Virus record (IMG/VR): IMGVR_UViG_3300028840_002431
Coordinates: 1-64,000 of that record
DNA length: 64,000 nt
Reading direction: 5' to 3' (one strand)
In this document: piece by piece, positions 6,353 through 44,517 of the stretch
How positions within the stretch are numbered: position 1 is the first letter of the stretch
How the letters are laid out: the number at the start of each line of letters is the position of its first letter
Position numbers and translations under genes: made by a program
Notes under the pieces: generated by a model
The model's database searches: none
Seen by the model: only the letters and a program-made list of their open reading frames with translations
Told to the model about the DNA's origin: nothing

Positions 6353-6793
6353 CTACTTAATAAGGGGGTCATAAGTTTTTGCGCTCTTAGACGCCGCTTC
6401 CGACGCCGCGCCAACTCCATGCTCACCCTTTACTTTTTCATAGGTAGACTTGTGCGCTAAATCCCGCGCCTCCTCCCAAGAAGAGGTCACTTGGCCCTGA
6501 AAATTGGGTTGCAAACGGTTCGGACTGACATGATCCCGTTGGCGTTGAGTCATGACGCGCCTACGGTCTGCGCGATAAGCGTTTTCTTTGGCGGCTTTCG
6601 ACACCCAACCACCTGACTCGCCGTCCTTGAGAACGAAGTCCACCCCGCCTGGATCGAACACTAACTGGACGTGGCCACCGCACGTGCAGTCCAGTATGAG
6701 ATCCCCGTCCTTCACGAGATCGTACTGCGCAAATGTCAGCTTGCGGTCTTCCCGCTTCTGACAATCCTTACATTCTGTGTTGTATACAGGCAT
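6353..6793 (-). CDS. FmdB-like zinc-ribbon protein
   Basis: MPVYNTECKDC...DCTCGG followed by FVLKDGESGGW resembles the MPxYxYxCxxC...CxxCG...FKGxGW pattern. Confidence 0.7.
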   Translation of the reverse strand: MPVYNTECKDCQKREDRKLTFAQYDLVKDGDLILDCTCGGHVQLVFDPGGVDFVLKDGESGGWVSKAAKENAYRADRRRVMTQRQRDHVSPNRLQPNFQGQVTSSWEEARDLAHKSTYEKVKGEHGVGAASEAASKSAKTYDPLIK

Positions 6794-6804
6794 TTTGATC
6801 CGAT

Positions 6805-7644
6805 CTATTTTTTAGCTACCGACCAATCCTTGGCGTGGGTTAGGACCGCTGCCACGTGCTTACACACACGATTGACGCCGGAAGGGTCTCTGATGATTGG
6901 AAAGCTCGCCGTCCCACGAGGTTTTCCATCGATATATTCTTCCGTCTTGGCGTGGTATTCCGGTCCCTGCCAACGCCAAGCCGGGCACGAACACTTTATA
7001 TCCAAGTCCATCTTGGAGAACTTCGTGATTCTCCCTTTACGAGACGCCTTGATCTTGACGACCTTGGCTCCGTTGCCGCAATCGACAGAGAAAACCCAAC
7101 GCAAATTCTTCTTGTCCACACGTTTGGTGCTCACAGCGCATCGGCTGGCACGCTCGACATACCGTGGGTTAAGGTTTTCCGTTATGGTGTCCATCCGAAG
7201 AGCGACCTTGACTCTGGCACCGCTTTTCAGACGGAGTGTCGGGGAGTTGTGTAATGTGTATAATCCGACAACAAATTCGGCAGACGCAGACTTTGTATTA
7301 GGAATCCCGTCGCGGTAAGGGTACTTCGTCTTAGGGCCTACCCACTTACCCTTGCCGAAGGCTCCGATACCGTCATTCTTGTCCTCGTTGTCGTCGTTAA
7401 TCTCCGGACGTTCTTGGTCTTTTAAAAGATCGTCGGCCTCGTCCACTCGATGGATAGACTCGTCCTCAGGTTTGTCAAAGTTACGAGTTTCGTCGAGAGG
7501 TTTCACATAGGTCTTGGTGCCGGGAATATCCGACTCAAGAGGTAGCCCCTTGTCGCGTGGCTCGCCCCCCGGCAACGCCGACTCTGCCACCGGTCGTCCG
7601 TACGCCGGTCTAGTGGTAAGAGGTTGTGTTAGCGAAGTCTTCAT
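6805..7644 (-). CDS. SWIM zinc-finger domain protein
   Basis: C-terminal CSCPAW...VCKHVAAVL (CxC-xn-CxH). Confidence 0.75.
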   Translation of the reverse strand: MKTSLTQPLTTRPAYGRPVAESALPGGEPRDKGLPLESDIPGTKTYVKPLDETRNFDKPEDESIHRVDEADDLLKDQERPEINDDNEDKNDGIGAFGKGKWVGPKTKYPYRDGIPNTKSASAEFVVGLYTLHNSPTLRLKSGARVKVALRMDTITENLNPRYVERASRCAVSTKRVDKKNLRWVFSVDCGNGAKVVKIKASRKGRITKFSKMDLDIKCSCPAWRWQGPEYHAKTEEYIDGKPRGTASFPIIRDPSGVNRVCKHVAAVLTHAKDWSVAKK

Positions 7645-38736: not shown

Positions 38737-39249
38737 CTACTCCGAAGGCAAAGTTGGGGTTGTTATTTTCACGAGAGGGTCCGGCCGAATTCTAAGGAAC
38801 CAGAACCAAATAGCTTTCCACCAGGGGAGTGACGGCATCGTCTCAGATCCTAACGCCCAGAGAAGACCGTAAACTTCGGCCATGTTCTCGGCCACCCAAT
38901 CGAGATCGGTTATCTGACGGTAAAACTCCTCGCTGATAGACTCCCGTGTGGAAGCCAGATCGAAGTAGGGGCACCGTTGAGCATCAATCGGATCTTCGCA
39001 GATTGTCCCTCCCCACTCCGCTGGGTCAGACGAATTAAGCATACACAACCCGATGACAGGCGAGGAAACGGATGTCCGGTTGTAATTTTCGTTTGGCTCC
39101 CCCGCCACCTCCTTACGCAAATCCAACGGCTGCCGATGGTTGTGTATGCAGTTGTACGGCACACGGGCACACGCCTGAGACACCCTACGATCTAACTCCT
39201 CCGACAACAGGTGTCGGATTCGGTTCTGGATTTCAGATTCAGACCGCAC
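38737..39249 (-). CDS. Hypothetical Cys/His-containing protein
   Basis: NCIHNH...CML...ICED...RCPYF; Trp-rich hydrophobic segment near the C-terminus. Confidence 0.65.
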   Translation of the reverse strand: MRSESEIQNRIRHLLSEELDRRVSQACARVPYNCIHNHRQPLDLRKEVAGEPNENYNRTSVSSPVIGLCMLNSSDPAEWGGTICEDPIDAQRCPYFDLASTRESISEEFYRQITDLDWVAENMAEVYGLLWALGSETMPSLPWWKAIWFWFLRIRPDPLVKITTPTLPSE

Positions 39250-39916
39250 GTGTTTCCCGTTGTAGTTTCAGATAACGCTGCCCGTCGTCTGTGGTGATCT
39301 CGGAGCCTTTGTAGCCAATCACAGCATGTTCAAGGAAAGCCGCCTTGTGGGTCACAAGCAAAACCTCTATCCCAGTCTTGGTGGCCAACTGTTTCAGAAA
39401 CAGACCCGTCCGATCGATGTACTCATCCGACACGGCAGCAAGAGTCTCGTCGAGCGCCAATAAAGGCCACTTGTTGAGACGCCGCAAAGCTAACACTCTC
39501 AAGATAAGCGACGCGATACTCGCCGGGCCTCCCCCAAACGCTTCCAGCGGGTGGCCCTTAATCTCTGCCTTCTGGTCGGCCTGTTTCAGACAGAAGTCTA
39601 TGGCCAGTTTGTTGTAACGCTGCCCTACTTCGGCCTCAAAGGATAAGTTTTGGTCCACGAAAATGGTGCGTAAACCCTCCGTGATCACACTCTCTATTGA
39701 ACGCACGTGATCCATGACGAGTTGATCCATCAATACCCGGAACAACTCGCCAACCTTTGACAAAACGTCTATCTTCCACGCGAGATCCTTGACCTCCTGT
39801 TCCCGCGTGTCCAGGTCCCGTTGAGTCTGGTCCCGCAGGGCCTGAAGACCGGAAGCGGTTTCCCTAAGCGCCTTGACCCTTAATCTATTCCCGGCGTGAA
39901 GCGTGTCACATTGCAT
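39239..39916 (-). CDS. SbcC/Rad50 ATPase, C-terminal half
   Basis: Short coiled coil, signature variant AFGGG, Walker B LALDE, H-loop VTH; no Walker A. Confidence 0.85.
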   Translation of the reverse strand: MQCDTLHAGNRLRVKALRETASGLQALRDQTQRDLDTREQEVKDLAWKIDVLSKVGELFRVLMDQLVMDHVRSIESVITEGLRTIFVDQNLSFEAEVGQRYNKLAIDFCLKQADQKAEIKGHPLEAFGGGPASIASLILRVLALRRLNKWPLLALDETLAAVSDEYIDRTGLFLKQLATKTGIEVLLVTHKAAFLEHAVIGYKGSEITTDDGQRYLKLQRETRAV

Positions 39917-41136
39917 ACGTGTACCCCTTCCGCCACGTTCTCTGCCCCGCTCCCACCAGCAATGGTGCCGTCGTCGCTCAGAAGGAACTCATCGATCGTT
40001 CGGAACATGTAGAGGTCCTTCGGCCGCTTCTCACCGGCTTCCAGAATATAGATTCTGAATTCCACCCACTCGCCCTTCACATTCTCGAAGAGGTGAAGCA
40101 TGTGGTTGACGTTGACGTTGGCCGCGAGTTCCTCTTTTACCTGGGACTCTATGACTTGGTCGATGTTGACCGGGAGACTCTTTATGGTGTTACCCTCATC
40201 AACACTTGAGAACCAGAACTTTTCCGATGACGGATCGAAATGAAGACGGATCTTCTTCTTCTCCTTGTGCAAACCAGCCCTCATGAATTGCAACTGGTAG
40301 TGCATCCTCTTACAGTTGACCTTCACAACAACCTGATCGGTCTTTGAGTAGTATCCGAACTTCTTCCACGTGTCCTCGTGGTGCGGCCAACCGATAACGT
40401 CCTCCTTCTCGTTAACGGCGTACGTACACTTGGCCGTCTTGTATGCCTTAATACTTCCAGACGACTGGCCCATGAAGGATTCTAACAACGGGAGGTGTTG
40501 GCCCGGCGCTACCAACCCCTTTCCCAAAAACGCCTCACTGTAAAAGTAAAAGGCTTCGGTGCCGTTGGACGAAAAGAGAAACCCATTAGCCTTCTTGGCT
40601 AGTTCCGGCTCGCCGTCGTCCCCGAATATCTGGATGGTTTTATAGAACTCGTTTGAGACCGCCTCATTGGGCTTGGCCGCGAAGTTCTTAGCCATCCCAA
40701 TGGCCATTTGTAAGGTCTTTATGTTGTAGACCTTAGGCTCGTCGGACATGGCGTTCTGGATGTCCTTCTCAAACAAGTTCATCGAGCGTGGATCGAACGA
40801 GGCGCGAACCGTCTCACCGGAAGAACCGAAAGTGTACTTGACTTTGAAAGTCTCTCCCTCAGACGTGGCCGTGAACGTAATAGGTTCCGACACGAACGCG
40901 AACTCGCCTATATAATCGGCGGGGTACATGAACGAGCCTTCGCCTTCCACGTCCGTAACAGGGAAGCTGGTCCGGACTTCGTGGCCGCCATTCTTAGAAT
41001 AGATCTTGCACACGTCCCCGCTCACCACGAAGAGAAATCCCCTCTCCTGTTCCGCAGTCATCTGCGGACTGATGATAGAGGACATCTTGAGTGCTTTGTT
41101 CAGTTGCTCAGCATCAACCGTAAATTTGATTTCCAT
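39880..41136 (-). CDS. dnaN: DNA polymerase III beta-type sliding clamp
   Basis: 418 aa; IKFTVDAEQLNKALK N-terminus, three-domain periodicity, ANVNVNHMLHLF...WVEFRI C-terminal pattern; clamp-loader genes in the same module. Confidence 0.7.
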   Translation of the reverse strand: MEIKFTVDAEQLNKALKMSSIISPQMTAEQERGFLFVVSGDVCKIYSKNGGHEVRTSFPVTDVEGEGSFMYPADYIGEFAFVSEPITFTATSEGETFKVKYTFGSSGETVRASFDPRSMNLFEKDIQNAMSDEPKVYNIKTLQMAIGMAKNFAAKPNEAVSNEFYKTIQIFGDDGEPELAKKANGFLFSSNGTEAFYFYSEAFLGKGLVAPGQHLPLLESFMGQSSGSIKAYKTAKCTYAVNEKEDVIGWPHHEDTWKKFGYYSKTDQVVVKVNCKRMHYQLQFMRAGLHKEKKKIRLHFDPSSEKFWFSSVDEGNTIKSLPVNIDQVIESQVKEELAANVNVNHMLHLFENVKGEWVEFRIYILEAGEKRPKDLYMFRTIDEFLLSDDGTIAGGSGAENVAEGVHVCNVTRFTPGID

Positions 41137-41143
41137 GTGTTCC

Positions 41144-41413
41144 TCATTTCTGTTGGAATTGCGCGAGAGCCTCTTCGACCTCGGTCAAAGACTCATCCAG
41201 TCTCGTGATCATATCCTCCAACTCCTTCTTCGCCTGATCACGTTCCTGGGCAATTTTCTTAGGGTCATACCCGGCGTCTTTTATCTCCTGGACAATGGCA
41301 GCCAACTCTTGTTTCTTGGCTTCCAGTTGGCCAGACAGACTCGCCTTTTTCTGGACAACGTCGTTGTATCTTCGTTGTAAGTCCTCGATTCTCTTTTTAA
41401 CAGTATCGGCCAT
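41144..41413 (-). CDS. Small coiled-coil protein
   Basis: 89 aa with continuous heptads broken once by GYDP; GAGGTG SD. Confidence 0.75.
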   Translation of the reverse strand: MADTVKKRIEDLQRRYNDVVQKKASLSGQLEAKKQELAAIVQEIKDAGYDPKKIAQERDQAKKELEDMITRLDESLTEVEEALAQFQQK

Positions 41414-41446
41414 AGATGTCGCACCTCGTGGTTTATCCCAAGGGGG

Positions 41447-42346
41447 TCAGAAACTGACCTCCCCCTCCTCTACACCACGATTCCGGTCTTCCAGAATCTG
41501 GGTTTTAGTATTATCGGACAACACTCTTGTGCCCTCCGGACAGACGGCCTGGAAATCACAAAGACGGCAATTGGAACCCGGCGAAGCCAGAAAACACACG
41601 CCCGGCTCACTTCCCCGGAGCTTCCGTTTCGCCCCCTCAATCTTGCCGATGGCTTCCAGCGCCGCGTTTTTAAGGTCGTCCAATTGCTTCTGGGTCGCGT
41701 CAACCCAATCCAGGCACTCCTTTGGCTCGAAACGCCAGTAAAGGAACGCCAGCCGGTCGGGGACCACACCCTTCTTCATCTGGTACAACATGGCGTACCA
41801 CCGCAATTGGCGCTCGTCTGTGTACCTATCCCGCCAGCGGGACCCCTTCCCATCCAGGAGGACCAAATCGTTATGAGGTTTGATGCGACGAATTATGAAG
41901 TCAGCCCGACCAGCAAGGGTGTGCCCTCGGACAGAAGTATTTAGAACAACCTCGGCGTGTGCCTCTACCCCCATGAGCCGGTGTGCTTTGATGCCCCGAA
42001 TCCCTCTAGGAATGGTCTCTCTGACCTCTTGTTCTACCTCCTCTATCGACCTCGAACCCGGTTTCAGACCCGGTTCGTTCCAATCGAAGACACCGCCCCT
42101 CCGAATCTCCTGGACGACAACCTTGTTCAACACAGGCCGCACAAGATCCAACATATGGAGTGCGGCGTTGCGCTTAGTCCAGATCCTATCCTCGTAATAC
42201 TTTTCGAAGAGCTTTCCGACCACGTCCCCATAGAGCATGTGTACACGATTACCCGGCTCCGGGAGTTTCGGTTTACCGATATACCGGTAGTAGTAGGCTC
42301 TTGCGCACTGTCTAAAGACAGAGAAACCGGAGTAAGATAAATACAC
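41447..42346 (-). CDS. PD-(D/E)XK nuclease (RecB-like)
   Basis: YLSYSGFSVFRQC, LAGRADFI, LLDGKGS, QLRWYA, C-terminal CRLCDFQAVC. Confidence 0.85.
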   Translation of the reverse strand: MYLSYSGFSVFRQCARAYYYRYIGKPKLPEPGNRVHMLYGDVVGKLFEKYYEDRIWTKRNAALHMLDLVRPVLNKVVVQEIRRGGVFDWNEPGLKPGSRSIEEVEQEVRETIPRGIRGIKAHRLMGVEAHAEVVLNTSVRGHTLAGRADFIIRRIKPHNDLVLLDGKGSRWRDRYTDERQLRWYAMLYQMKKGVVPDRLAFLYWRFEPKECLDWVDATQKQLDDLKNAALEAIGKIEGAKRKLRGSEPGVCFLASPGSNCRLCDFQAVCPEGTRVLSDNTKTQILEDRNRGVEEGEVSF

Positions 42347-43324
42347 TTAGTCCTCTCCGCGAGCGCGTTTCAGGTAGACCAGGGCCATCTCCCTGACTTC
42401 GGCGGCGAAATCAAGAGACTTCACATTGTCCTCGATAGTCGCAGTTGGGTCGAACGATGCGTCCTCTTGCAACCGTTCGATGAAACCCTCGATGCTACGG
42501 CTTTCACCTTCCATCCGCTCTTTCTTCTCGAAATCGAACACCTCCTCAGGCGGTAACACATCCAACGGGAACGTCTCGATGTTGATCCCCTCTGGTTTGA
42601 ACTCCAACAACGCCACTTGAGGCGTCCGTTTGATGTTCTCGTGTATGAGAGCGCCTCGTGAAACAGCCCCCTGGTTCACGAAATGCTTGCCGCCTATGTG
42701 AGAGACGCCCTGATCTTGGTGCCAGTGCCCAAACGCCCAAACATCTGGCCCGTCGGGTGTTATAAGATCTGCGTACTTGAACACCGGTTCCTTGAAGAAC
42801 CCTTCTACATTAGGAGGCGGGGCCTCCCCCGCCAAGGCGTGAACCACCGCTACTAGAAAATCGTCCCCCGGTTGTTTCTGGACAGCACGAAGCTCATCTA
42901 CCGTTCGCTTCAGGCTGTAAGGAACTCCGACGACTCTGACCTGAAACCCTTCGTCTTGAAACACCTCTTCCCGCAGTCTCCGGAAAGCGTTGAAGACATA
43001 CAGGACCCCAAGAGGTTGTTTCTCAATGCTGTCGAGATTGTTATATGTGATGTCGTGGTTGCCTTCCACACAATAAACAGGGCAGCCGTACTGGCCATGG
43101 ATCAAGCCCGTCCGGATATTCAAAGCATGAGGGTTCTTACTCGGCGTCTTTATATGGAAGTAGTCCCCGCCGTCCAGAACGGCGTCAACCTTGTGTTCGT
43201 TGGCCAGCGCTCCTATCTGTTCCAGGTTGGACCAAATCTCTGCCGGATAGTCGCCCTTCCACGACGCGGGCGTCTTATCCGTCAGATGCACATCCGTGCG
43301 AAAAATGAAAGCTACTCTTGACAT
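42347..43324 (-). CDS. sbcD: SbcD/Mre11-like metallophosphoesterase nuclease
   Basis: DVH, GGDYF, GNHD, VVH, FGHWH motifs. Confidence 0.9.
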   Translation of the reverse strand: MSRVAFIFRTDVHLTDKTPASWKGDYPAEIWSNLEQIGALANEHKVDAVLDGGDYFHIKTPSKNPHALNIRTGLIHGQYGCPVYCVEGNHDITYNNLDSIEKQPLGVLYVFNAFRRLREEVFQDEGFQVRVVGVPYSLKRTVDELRAVQKQPGDDFLVAVVHALAGEAPPPNVEGFFKEPVFKYADLITPDGPDVWAFGHWHQDQGVSHIGGKHFVNQGAVSRGALIHENIKRTPQVALLEFKPEGINIETFPLDVLPPEEVFDFEKKERMEGESRSIEGFIERLQEDASFDPTATIEDNVKSLDFAAEVREMALVYLKRARGED

Positions 43325-44517
43325 TCATGCCCCGAATCAAAAGGCCGTTCACAAAAGGGACATATACCCAACTCTGCTTCCAACTGGCGCTTCTCTTGGA
43401 TAGCGTCTTTCAATTCCTTTTTCACCTGGAGCAGTGCCCGAGACACTTCGTACACACGAGTCGCCCACGAATCGAGACGAAGGTAAGACTCCTTGTTCTC
43501 TTTCAGCGGCTCGATGTCCGGGACCACAATAAGTTCAACAGGCTGGAACTTGCCGAAGAACTCTCGCAACAGTTCGACCTTGGAGGCCCACTCAACGAGT
43601 TTGTCGTGCGCGGCATCTGATGACAGGACTTGGAAGCTCGGAAGCTCGATAACATCCACCCCCTCCAAAGCGAGGACCGCCGCCGCCCTGTTTTCATGAT
43701 CCTCTACGAACTCCTCCAAGGCGAAGAAGGCTTCTCCCCCGTTTGTTAGGGAGTCGATGCTTGGAATCTTGACCAAATTTACGTCCTTGAGGTCCCGGAT
43801 TTGCTGGCCCACACTGAGCACAGAAAACAGGAACCGCTCTAATTTCTCGGATTTAACACGAACGCTTTCGGCCTTCCGGTCAAGCTCTTCGAGTTCCACC
43901 ACGCGCTCGACGACCCCGTCCAACCCGTCATAACCAGCCAGGGTCATCCGCAGATCCAGAACGTCCTTCTCTCGGACCTTACGGGTCGCTTTGGCCTCCC
44001 TCCGATCCTTGTCCGCCAGCCGGATGGCAGAGTTGATTTGATCCAACTTCGCCACATCCGACAAAATATCAGCGGCCACAGTGCCCGGTTTGTTCAAGAT
44101 GAAGATGGGCTTGAACTGATCTGACACCTGCAAGATTTCCTTCTCGTCGCCCAGCTTGACCGGGCCGAAGTCTTCCAGGAGGAAATCGGGAGTCCCCCTC
44201 CCTACGACGGTGTGTTCCGTCCCGTTGTACTCATATCGGTTAACCGCGTCGCCCTTTTCCCACAGGAGGTCCAGGCCCTCAGTCTCGATGTGGACCAAAC
44301 AAGAGCATTTACAGGTCTTGGCACCCCGTAGCAATCGGAGACAGTTGGGAGAGTGCCTCACATAGTTGTCTACCGGAGAGCCGGTCAAAGCCGCCTTGAC
44401 GGCCCTGACGATAGCACTCTTGCCGATGTTACTTCTCCCAGCCAAGGCCGAGAAGCCGTCCACCTCGACGACTTCATGGGCCACAGACTGGAAATTCCTG
44501 ATCTCTATCCGAACCAT
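43312..44517 (-). CDS. SbcC/Rad50 ATPase, N-terminal half ending in the zinc hook
   Basis: IEIRNFQS, Walker A GRSNIGKS, Q-loop VSDQF, long coiled coil, terminal CPFC. Confidence 0.85.
   Translation of the reverse strand: MVRIEIRNFQSVAHEVVEVDGFSALAGRSNIGKSAIVRAVKAALTGSPVDNYVRHSPNCLRLLRGAKTCKCSCLVHIETEGLDLLWEKGDAVNRYEYNGTEHTVVGRGTPDFLLEDFGPVKLGDEKEILQVSDQFKPIFILNKPGTVAADILSDVAKLDQINSAIRLADKDRREAKATRKVREKDVLDLRMTLAGYDGLDGVVERVVELEELDRKAESVRVKSEKLERFLFSVLSVGQQIRDLKDVNLVKIPSIDSLTNGGEAFFALEEFVEDHENRAAAVLALEGVDVIELPSFQVLSSDAAHDKLVEWASKVELLREFFGKFQPVELIVVPDIEPLKENKESYLRLDSWATRVYEVSRALLQVKKELKDAIQEKRQLEAELGICPFCERPFDSGHECQE

What the first reader, a model, noticed from the sequence alone, without database searches (positions are those of the whole stretch)
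39239..44517. SbcC/Rad50 split at the zinc hook, with a candidate third coiled-coil subunit
Seen: the N-half (Walker A, ~220-aa coil with repeated V.[IL]P.[IF]..L units, terminal CPFC hook) and the C-half (only ~60-70 aa of coil, AFGGG signature, Walker B, H-loop) are separated by sbcD, a PD-(D/E)XK nuclease, an 89-aa pure coiled-coil gene and the clamp. Known: Rad50 needs an antiparallel coil of equal arms joining the two ATPase halves. Inference: the arms are unequal, so the 89-aa protein (41144-41413) may supply the missing return strand, making a three-chain Rad50. The signature also deviates from LSGG.
Basis: partly seen in the sequence, partly recalled or inferred. Interest (0 to 1): 0.7.

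Follow-up and report, generated by a model that had tools for sequence, protein, structure and literature searches.

The report
Three-piece SbcC/Rad50 in phages
This huge phage encodes its Rad50-type DNA-end-processing ATPase as three separate proteins (a front half ending at the zinc hook, a roughly 90-residue helical strand, and a back half), and the same three-gene layout recurs in hundreds of phages and prophages without, as far as I could find, having been described.

Summary

The split is a stable family architecture, not decay. The N-half ends 10-30 residues after CxxC and the C-half stands alone at about 210-240 aa. Both were seen in 59+ huge-phage contigs, in isolated Bacillus and other phages, and in 44 of 301 sampled genomes of one bacterial class.

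The 89-aa gene belongs to a conserved family of small proteins built as helix, G(Y/V)(D/T/K)P turn, helix:
- 556 clusters matched it, nearly all of 83-104 aa.
- It accompanies the split in every lineage where it could be traced.
- Its order is always N-half, small coil, C-half. In Bacillota prophages the three are adjacent, often overlapping ORFs next to sbcD.
- Where the halves are far apart, it stays beside the N-half.
- A complex prediction gave only weak support (0.39; best control 0.00).

So a three-chain SbcC is well supported by comparative genomics. The idea that the small protein equalises the arms is not. The N-half coil (about 240 aa here) exceeds 89 aa plus about 65 aa. It also varies in steps of about 45 aa while the small protein stays constant.

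Verdict: a new variant of a known kind; the geometry is unresolved.

The parts
43312..44517 (-). SbcC/Rad50 N-half (401 aa): ABC ATPase lobe I, a long helix at 144-250, three proline-linker repeats, a terminal helix and the CPFC hook
   Evidence: Family hits: AAA_23 1.8e-5, Rad50_zn_hook 0.017 (below cut-off), phrog_16465 6.5e-18. AF2 model pLDDT 81. Foldseek top hits are Rad50 heads, 3av0_B at 1.8e-3; VIA Z 9-10.6 to SMC and Rad50 heads. 383 homologues of about 400-450 aa.
44416..44439 (-). Walker A, GRSNIGKS (aa 27-34)
   Evidence: Located. G27, G32 and K33 are invariant.
43747..43782 (-). Repeat linker 1, VNLVKIPSIDSL (aa 246-257)
   Evidence: Located. P252 is at least 90% conserved.
43624..43659 (-). 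Repeat linker 2, VDVIELPSFQVL (aa 287-298)
   Evidence: Located. P293 is at least 90% conserved. AF2 pLDDT is below 50 at 290-298.
43504..43539 (-). Repeat linker 3, VELIVVPDIEPL (aa 327-338)
   Evidence: Located. P333 is at least 90% conserved.
43351..43362 (-). CPFC zinc-hook motif (aa 386-389), 12 residues from the C-terminus
   Evidence: C386 and C389 are invariant in 64-66 sequences. All 35 prophage N-halves end 10-30 aa after CPxC.
42347..43324 (-). SbcD/Mre11 nuclease (325 aa); its start overlaps the N-half stop by 13 nt
   Evidence: Metallophos 1.6e-10, phrog_100 7e-10. NCBIfam Mre11 and SbcD hits lie below their cut-offs. Coordinates.
41447..42346 (-). Cas4/RecB-like PD-(D/E)XK nuclease (299 aa). 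It is part of the syntenic block in huge phages but is not part of the split SbcC.
   Evidence: PDDEXK_1 6.7e-19; Cas4 TIGR00372 1.8e-4. It is absent from the compact prophage operons.
41144..41413 (-). 89-aa small coil protein: helix 2-46, AGYDP turn, helix 54-88. Candidate third chain of SbcC.
   Evidence: AF2 pLDDT 88, pTM 0.45. The model is an extended, kinked rod. The family has 556 clusters, nearly all of 83-104 aa. Co-occurrence and gene order. Complex prediction gave weak support.
41261..41272 (-). Conserved turn GYDP (aa 48-51) of the small coil protein
   Evidence: G48 is invariant and P51 is at least 90% conserved in 48 sequences. The equivalent turn in prophages is G(V/Y/I)(K/E/D/T)PE.
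39880..41136 (-). Beta sliding clamp homologue (418 aa), interposed between the small coil gene and the C-half in huge phages
   Evidence: Profile hit to 1vpk_A at 1.4e-12 over 2-359. No Pfam or PHROG hit.
39239..39916 (-). SbcC/Rad50 C-half (225 aa): about 65 aa of coil plus ABC lobe II. Its start overlaps the clamp gene by 37 nt.
   Evidence: phrog_15167 3.6e-17. 397 homologues, the 120 listed of about 160-240 aa. Profile hits to SMC and Rad50 heads.
39527..39538 (-). Signature motif FGGG (aa 127-130), in place of LSGG
   Evidence: Invariant in 70 sequences; aligned to the LSGG of SMC3.
39446..39463 (-). Walker B, LLALDE (aa 152-157)
   Evidence: Located. D156 and E157 are invariant.
39347..39355 (-). 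H-loop, VTH (aa 188-190)
   Evidence: Located. T189 and H190 are at least 90% conserved.

Best explanation
The locus encodes a tripartite SbcC/Rad50.

Chain 1 (N-half) carries ATPase lobe I, the whole ascending helix system and the CxxC hook. It stops just past the apex.

Chain 2 (89 aa) is an extended two-helix strand. I infer that it takes up the descending strand next to the hook and lies antiparallel along the N-half helices.

Chain 3 (C-half) supplies the last approximately 65 residues of descending coil and ATPase lobe II.

The three chains assemble non-covalently with SbcD into an Mre11-Rad50-type nuclease. This enzyme serves the phage's recombination and replication module (RuvC, RecA/UvsX, Cas4-like nuclease, clamp, primase).

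The 40-45-aa proline-linker repeats of the N-half are surplus to the paired core. They vary in number without any compensation in the other chains, so they probably form a mid-arm insertion rather than paired coil.

Shown: the split, the motifs, the family-wide conservation, the co-occurrence and the gene order.

Inferred: physical binding of the small protein, its orientation, and the fate of the repeats.
For: 1. The split is conserved. There are 383 N-half and 397 C-half homologues; the 120 listed of each are about half-size. The catalytic residues are invariant. The genome has no second SbcC.

2. The small protein is a real family: 556 clusters, 110 of them at E<=1e-10, almost all of 83-104 aa and matched end to end.

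3. Independent lineages carry it.
- A profile built only from the window's clade gives a single six-frame hit in the whole 0305phi8-36 genome (gp7, 2.1e-6) and a single hit in phBC6A51 (BC1854, 6.6e-6). Each hit lies between the N-half and C-half genes.
- The same profile hits LR745208 at 2.4e-14 and vB_BboS-125 gp34 at 3e-9.

4. Gene order is always colinear.
- 35 of 35 bacterial loci have N-half, small coil, C-half in that order, mostly as an sbcD-N-coil-C operon with junctions of -26 to +38 nt.
- 10 of 10 N-seeded loci have the coil gene immediately downstream.

5. Where the halves are dispersed, the coil stays beside the N-half (Tunturi_5 gp181/gp180; L082).

6. Complex prediction:
- Score 0.39 against a best of 3 controls of 0.00.
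- That mark was reached by 58 of 80 solved complexes and 2 of 110 mismatched pairs. At 0.60 or under it was reached by only 7 of those 80 and by both mismatches, so the tool rates it weak support.
- The runs agree in at least 97% of contacts and the partner's pLDDT is at least 77.
- Replacing the N-half drops the score to 0.00.

7. The AF2 model of the small protein is an extended, kinked rod rather than a tight hairpin.

8. Length bookkeeping by my own reading of the sequences:
- Window: conserved ascending core of about 105 aa (helix 144-250) plus about 48 aa (336-383), about 153 aa in total. Descending: about 80 helical residues of the small protein plus about 65 aa of C-half coil.
- Microcystis phage Mvi-JY20 has no extra repeat helices: about 138 aa ascending against about 131-144 aa descending.
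Against: - The complex score is weak by the tool's own calibration, and no contacts were returned.
- No natural fusion of the small protein to either half was found among the best 150 family members.
- Counted in full, the arms stay unequal. N-half length varies in steps of about 45 aa with no change in the small protein (r = -0.14, n = 46; rho = -0.08, n = 34).
- Profile-profile similarity of the small protein to the coils of either half is low (16% and 39% probability), so descent from the ancestral descending coil is not shown.
- In huge phages three unrelated genes sit between the pieces.
- Magritte has both halves but no detectable small coil, and its N-half has no CxxC.
- The small ORFs in Tunturi_5 and Mvi-JY20 are matched only weakly (7e-4 and 0.01 in a small set). 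The whole-genome search found none in either.
Confidence: 0.6

Rival explanations
1. The small protein binds the split SbcC but is not a hook-to-head return strand. It covers only the proximal long helix, or acts as a collar or regulator there. The distal N-half (repeats, last helix and CxxC) pairs with the same region of a second N-half as a parallel homodimer, stapled by zinc. That arrangement needs no return strand.
For: - It explains why the repeat number can change by single units with nothing compensating in the other chains.
- It explains why the hook can sit at a chain end.
- The long helix 144-250 (about 105 aa) is roughly matched by the C-half coil plus one helix of the small protein.
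- The predicted binding depends on the N-half.
Against: - Parallel homodimeric Rad50 arms are not known (own knowledge).
- The prophage N-half tails after CPxC look like the start of a canonical descending helix, for example CPLCGTDLTPEHVEK.
- Mvi-JY20 has almost equal ascending and descending lengths.
- No dimer model was run.
Confidence: 0.22
2. The 89-aa protein has nothing to do with SbcC. It would be a generic coiled-coil protein that works with its neighbours in the huge-phage block (the Cas4-like nuclease or the clamp), or an unrelated small factor kept there by synteny.
For: - In the window's clade it always lies between the PD-(D/E)XK nuclease and the clamp.
- Coiled-coil profiles attract nonspecific hits.
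Against: - Bacillota prophages have no clamp or Cas4-like gene in the operon, yet keep the small gene exactly between the N-half and the C-half in 35 of 35 loci.
- The whole-genome searches gave one hit per genome, at that position.
- In dispersed genomes it follows the N-half.
Confidence: 0.06
3. The halves are remnants of a decayed or mis-assembled sbcC gene and are not functional.
For: None beyond the unusual layout. An AP2-domain gene, possibly a mobile endonuclease, lies between the pieces in vB_BboS-125, which hints that insertion of mobile elements accompanied the fission.
Against: - Hundreds of homologues of each piece exist, with invariant Walker A, Q-loop, signature, Walker B and H-loop residues and intact ORFs.
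- The layout is present in isolated, viable phages.
- It is present in 44 of 301 sampled genomes.
Confidence: 0.01

Closest known systems
SbcCD / Mre11-Rad50 (E. coli SbcCD, phage T4 gp46-gp47, archaeal Rad50-Mre11)
   Same: - A bipartite ABC ATPase head with Walker A and Q-loop on one lobe, and signature, Walker B and H-loop on the other.
- A helical arm topped by CxxC.
- An adjacent, translationally coupled calcineurin-like nuclease.
- A position inside a recombination module.
- The N-lobe model matches Rad50 and SMC heads best.
   Different: - It is encoded as three polypeptides instead of one, cut just after the hook and again about 80-95 residues later.
- The ascending part carries 40-45-aa proline-linker repeats in variable number.
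- The signature is FGGG rather than LSGG.
- The counted arm lengths are unequal.
Engineered two-chain Rad50 catalytic domains used for crystallography (N and C segments co-expressed; for example PDB 1f2u and 1ii8, matched)
   Same: They show that lobe I and lobe II on separate chains can form an active ABC head (own knowledge of those studies). Here nature uses the same cut principle.
   Different: Those constructs delete the arm and the hook. Here the whole arm is kept and is shared among three natural chains.
Mre11-Rad50 fusion proteins (Mimivirus R555, Bacillus phage 0305phi8-36 gp8; Yoshida et al. 2011, PMC3175470)
   Same: 0305phi8-36 gp8 is an SbcD plus N-half fusion of the same family. 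A Paenibacillus plasmid copy has the same fusion (L107).
   Different: That paper reported that one P-loop segment 'was not observed' in the Bacillus phage. It is in fact encoded separately as gp5, with the small coil gp7 in between.
Fragmented ribonucleotide reductase NrdA described in PMC3045599 (abstract seen)
   Same: An essential enzyme gene is fragmented and the product is reassembled from separate polypeptides. An AP2-domain gene lies between the pieces in vB_BboS-125.
   Different: It is a different enzyme. Here the fission is ancient, widespread and into three parts, and most loci have no mobile element at the junctions.

Membership tests
Rad50/SbcC (SMC-like ABC ATPase of the Mre11-Rad50 complex) | ABC head with Walker A and Q-loop (lobe I) and signature, Walker B, D-loop and H-loop (lobe II) | tested here: met
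   All motifs are present and conserved, but on two chains. The signature is FGGG, aligned to LSGG.
Rad50/SbcC (SMC-like ABC ATPase of the Mre11-Rad50 complex) | Fold of lobe I like that of Rad50/SMC heads | tested here: met
   Foldseek top hits are Rad50 (3av0_B 1.8e-3, 3auy, 1f2u). VIA Z is 9-10.6 to SMC and Rad50 heads. This does not separate Rad50 from SMC, RecN or RecF.
Rad50/SbcC (SMC-like ABC ATPase of the Mre11-Rad50 complex) | CxxC zinc hook at the apex of the arm | tested here: inconclusive
   CPFC has invariant cysteines at the end of the helical region. Pfam Rad50_zn_hook scores 0.017 and NCBIfam Rad50 PRK03918 scores 0.0019, both below their cut-offs. Zinc binding and dimerisation cannot be tested here.
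Rad50/SbcC (SMC-like ABC ATPase of the Mre11-Rad50 complex) | One polypeptide whose two coil strands are of equal length and fold back intramolecularly | tested here: not met
   There are three ORFs. The N-half has about 240 coil residues against 89 aa plus about 65 aa. N-half length varies independently of the other two.
Rad50/SbcC (SMC-like ABC ATPase of the Mre11-Rad50 complex) | Cognate Mre11/SbcD nuclease partner | tested here: met
   The SbcD gene overlaps the N-half stop by 13 nt. Metallophos 1.6e-10 and phrog_100. SbcD is adjacent in nearly all related loci. Physical interaction was not tested.
Rad50/SbcC (SMC-like ABC ATPase of the Mre11-Rad50 complex) | ATP-dependent nuclease and DNA-end-processing activity | not testable with these tools
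   This needs biochemistry.
Pfam DUF7491 (coiled-coil region of unknown function), the best Pfam hit of the 89-aa protein | Score above the Pfam gathering threshold | tested here: not met
   22.7 bits against a cut-off of 30. The 89-aa protein is treated as not a member.
Bacterial beta sliding clamp (DnaN), for the 418-aa neighbour | Full-length profile similarity to solved beta clamps | tested here: met
   1vpk_A 1.4e-12 and 8dt6_A 2.5e-11, over about 360 profile positions.

The most novel reading that the evidence does not exclude
The arm of this Rad50 is held together only non-covalently at its apex, because the chain ends at the hook and a separate 90-residue strand continues it. If so, the ring could be opened or re-closed by exchange of that strand. 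That would give a built-in gate or regulator of DNA entry that single-chain Rad50 lacks. The variable proline-linker repeats would form a new mid-arm module.
Probability: 0.15. Interest if true: 0.8.

Novelty: new variant of a known kind. Interest (0 to 1): 0.6.

Why it matters
Rad50/SbcC is one of the most studied DNA-repair machines, and how its long arm and hook transmit signals to the head is still debated. A natural, widespread version cut exactly at the hook, with a separate strand of about 90 residues, offers several things.

- Ready-made material to test which parts of the arm must be covalently continuous.
- An explanation for 'missing' ATPase halves in phage annotations. The 0305phi8-36 case in PMC3175470 is one example.
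- A function for a family of at least 556 clusters of unannotated small proteins.
- Better annotation of huge phages and Bacillota prophages, where the pieces are now labelled 'exonuclease', 'hypothetical protein' and 'chromosome segregation ATPase'.

Tried and rejected
I rebuilt the alignments without them and did not send those sequences again.
- I looked for natural fusions of the small protein to either half. None was found among the best 150 family members. The two longer hits, P0295 and P0307, carry unrelated C-terminal extensions.
- profile-profile comparison of the small protein with the N-half gave 16% probability (helix 346-388 plus hook). Comparison with the C-half coil gave 39%. 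Both are too weak to claim homology or duplication.
- the PDB profile, Pfam and NCBIfam searches with the small protein returned only generic coiled coils.
- tblastn of 0305phi8-36 gp7 against phages found only itself.
- the N-half profile's best PDB sequence hit is a Leptospira leucine-rich-repeat protein (4u08_A, 1.3e-6, residues 181-338). I rejected this as pattern mimicry of the L/P-rich linkers, because AF2 predicts helices there.
- I considered that the YDGLD kink at 196-200 makes a hairpin. I rejected this because 144-250 superposes on straight helices of about 105 residues.
- I considered that the HxH after the hook gives each chain its own zinc finger. It is common in the huge-phage clade (86 of 99) but not in prophages (11 of 35), so it is clade-specific and not defining.
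-, and passages read: no paper describing a split SbcC/Rad50 was found. The library is incomplete.
- Contact-level geometry could not be obtained. The complex tool gave no contacts, and model coordinates are not exposed.


Full report
**What is there.** The window is the first 64 kb of a 416,539-bp IMG/VR virus record. Between 47.4 kb and 37.5 kb, one tightly packed minus-strand block encodes:
- a RuvC-like resolvase;
- RecA/UvsX;
- a 401-aa ABC ATPase N-half;
- SbcD;
- a Cas4-like PD-(D/E)XK nuclease;
- an 89-aa helical protein;
- a 418-aa protein;
- a 225-aa ABC ATPase C-half;
- then two unknown proteins and a 235-aa ORF that is weakly similar to an annotated phage DNA primase.

A profile of 31 homologues of the 418-aa protein hits solved beta clamps (1vpk_A, 1.4e-12). 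The genome has no other convincing SbcC.

**The two halves.**
- The N-half has an invariant Walker A and Q-loop, and an invariant C386/C389 pair 12 residues from its end.
- Its AF2 model (pLDDT 81) has an ABC lobe I whose best structural matches are Rad50, SMC and RecN heads.
- Residues 144-250 form one straight helix of about 105 residues. Helices 255-284, 301-328 and 336-383 follow, separated by three conserved V.[IL]..[IL]P.[IF]..L linkers spaced 40-41 residues apart.
- The C-half has about 65 residues that align with SMC coil, followed by lobe II. The invariant FGGG aligns to LSGG, and Walker B DE and the H-loop are present.
One refinement applies: the N-half 'coil' is segmented and repetitive.

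**The split is a family trait.**
- Searches returned 383 N-half and 397 C-half homologues. The 120 listed of each are about half-size, many from contigs of 100-550 kb.
- PHROGs already holds separate families for the two pieces.
- Among 68 IMG/VR loci fetched with the C-half, most keep the block RuvC, RecA, N-half, SbcD, PD-(D/E)XK, small coil, clamp, C-half. The small coil is detected in 59 of them. The nine without it are one truncated contig (L034) and eight distant loci, L065-L072.
- Split halves also occur in isolated phages: vB_BboS-125, phBC6A51, 0305phi8-36, Microcystis phage Mvi-JY20, Tunturi_5 and Magritte.
- A sample of 301 genomes of one bacterial class gave 44 with a split-type N-half, with open frames of about 470-780 aa.

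**The 89-aa protein.**
- It aligns without gaps to relatives as far away as Bacillus phages. The architecture is helix, turn (A/M)G(Y/V/F)(D/T/N)P, helix.
- An exhaustive profile search found 556 clusters (110 at E<=1e-10). Nearly all are 83-104 aa and are matched end to end.
- A profile built only from the window's clade gave exactly one six-frame hit in the whole 219-kb 0305phi8-36 genome (gp7, 2.1e-6). It gave exactly one in phBC6A51 (BC1854, 6.6e-6). Both hits lie between the N-half and C-half genes.
- The same profile hits the LR745208 ORF between the nuclease and the clamp at 2.4e-14, and vB_BboS-125 gp34 at 3e-9.
- In 37 bacterial-genome loci fetched with a Bacillus-type C-half, all 35 that hold both halves have the order N-half, small coil (75-96 aa), C-half. 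Usually this is a compact sbcD-N-coil-C operon with junctions of -26 to +38 nt. Six divergent coils missed by the HMM were found by position and show the same YGVKPEEL turn.
- Ten of ten loci seeded with the N-half instead also have the coil gene immediately downstream.
- Where the halves lie tens of kilobases apart, a weakly matching small coil sits beside the N-half. Examples are Tunturi_5 gp181/gp180, and L082 in the genome of L072.
- Magritte, whose N-half has no CxxC, has no detectable coil gene.
- This pattern excludes a link to the clamp or the Cas4-like nuclease, both of which are missing from the prophage operons.

**Does it bind, and how?**
- The mark was reached by 58 of 80 solved complexes and 2 of 110 mismatched pairs. 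At 0.60 or under it was reached by only 7 of those 80 and by both mismatches. The tool rates this 'weak support'.
- The runs agree in at least 97% of contacts and the partner's pLDDT is at least 77. Replacing the N-half by an unrelated protein gave 0.00. No contacts were released.
- Alone, the small protein is modelled as two helices (2-46 and 54-88; pLDDT 88, pTM 0.45). Over residues 1-89 the model superposes on single long coiled-coil helices. It is therefore an extended, kinked rod rather than a tight hairpin.

**Length bookkeeping.**
- Counted in full, the arms are not equal: about 240 helical and linker residues in the N-half against 89 aa plus about 65 aa.
- N-half length is quantised: 386-414 versus 445-468 in huge phages, and about 430, 475 and 525 in prophages. 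The steps equal one repeat of about 45 aa.
- Meanwhile the small protein stays at 88-92 aa (75-96 in prophages) and the C-half at 210-249 aa. There is no correlation.
- The parts of the N-half arm present in all lineages are the long helix (about 90-105 aa) and the last helix before the hook (about 45-50 aa). By my reading of the sequences these sum to about 138-153 residues. That is close to the two helices of the small protein plus the C-half coil (about 131-145). Mvi-JY20, which has no extra repeat helices, is nearly balanced.
- The prophage N-half tails after CPxC look like the first turns of a canonical descending helix.
- Together with the invariable gene order, this favours the following picture. 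An ancestral sbcC was cut just past the hook and again about 80-95 residues later. The small protein continues the descending strand. The repeats are an unpaired insertion.
- This remains inference. A rival geometry fits the repeat-number variation equally well: distal N-half arms pairing in parallel and stapled by zinc, with the small protein confined to the proximal helix.

**Comparison with what is known.**
- By head motifs, lobe I fold, hook motif and the coupled SbcD partner, this works like SbcCD/Mre11-Rad50.
- It fails the single-chain, equal-arm criterion and has a non-canonical signature.
- Five literature searches found no description of a split SbcC/Rad50.
- Yoshida et al. (PMC3175470) noted that one P-loop segment 'was not observed' in the 0305phi8-36 Mre11/Rad50 fusion. 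It is gp5, with the small coil gp7 in between.
- I therefore file the finding as a new variant of a known kind.

**Verdict.**
The three-chain architecture is strongly supported by comparative genomics. Physical binding is only weakly supported. The 'equal arms' idea is contradicted as stated.
- Interest is 0.6. This is a widespread, apparently overlooked way of building a central repair machine, and it makes questions about arm continuity directly testable.

Noticed in passing
window 44305-44355 (N-half aa 55-71): The ATPase lobe I of the N-half carries an insertion with H55, C59, C69 and C71 at least 90% conserved in the huge-phage clade. This may be an extra metal site. The Bacillus-type N-halves lack the segment.
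   Followed up: no
window 43315-43350 (N-half aa 390-401) and homologues: After CxxC, 86 of 99 huge-phage N-half tails carry two or more further His/Cys, typically CPTC-x6-8-HxH. Only 11 of 35 prophage N-halves do. This is a clade-specific second ligand pair next to the hook.
   Followed up: partly
window 39880-39916: The C-half start overlaps the clamp gene's 3' end by 37 nt, and the same overlap recurs in related loci (for example 10001-10037 in L005-L014). The N-half and SbcD genes overlap by 13 nt.
   Followed up: partly
window 41447-42346: The PD-(D/E)XK nuclease is Cas4-like (TIGR00372, 1.8e-4, below its cut-off). It has a C-terminal CRLCDFQAVC cysteine cluster plus an N-terminal cysteine, as in iron-sulfur Cas4/AddB nucleases.
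   Followed up: no
window 38737-39249: A 170-aa Cys-containing protein of unknown function follows the C-half. ORFs that look similar by eye follow the C-half in distant loci (L052, L058, L061 and L065-L072), and BLASTP matches Tunturi_5 gp21 at 4.6e-5, next to its primase.
   Followed up: no
L074 2474-4783 (0305phi8-36 gp8); L107 4588-6906 (Paenibacillus plasmid): SbcD is fused to the N-half in one ORF of about 770 aa, while the small coil and the C-half remain separate. This is fusion on one side and fission on the other.
   Followed up: partly
L002 4584-5156 and 6424-7404 (vB_BboS-125, NC_048735): An AP2-domain gene, possibly a mobile endonuclease, sits between the N-half and the small coil. 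A 326-aa SbcD ORF at 6424-7404 has no feature in the RefSeq record.
   Followed up: no
L083 4339-5391 (Magritte gp155) and L004 284-934 (gp2): Microbacterium phage Magritte has an N-half without any CxxC. Its C-half lies about 93 kb away in the linear record, at the left genome end. No small coil was detected anywhere in its genome.
   Followed up: partly
N-half aa 181-338: The N-half profile's best sequence hit in the PDB is a Leptospira leucine-rich-repeat protein (4u08_A, 1.3e-6). This is probably mimicry by the periodic L/P linkers, but the linker motif does resemble the LRR 'L..LP..I..L' segment.
   Followed up: partly
L065-L072 (IMG/VR): A distant C-half clade (27-31% identity) keeps a clamp-like gene a few ORFs upstream. 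Its N-half lies roughly 30-40 kb away in the two contigs where it was found (G001 and G003). Several homing-endonuclease-like ORFs (GIY-YIG-like and Cys-rich) are interspersed.
   Followed up: partly
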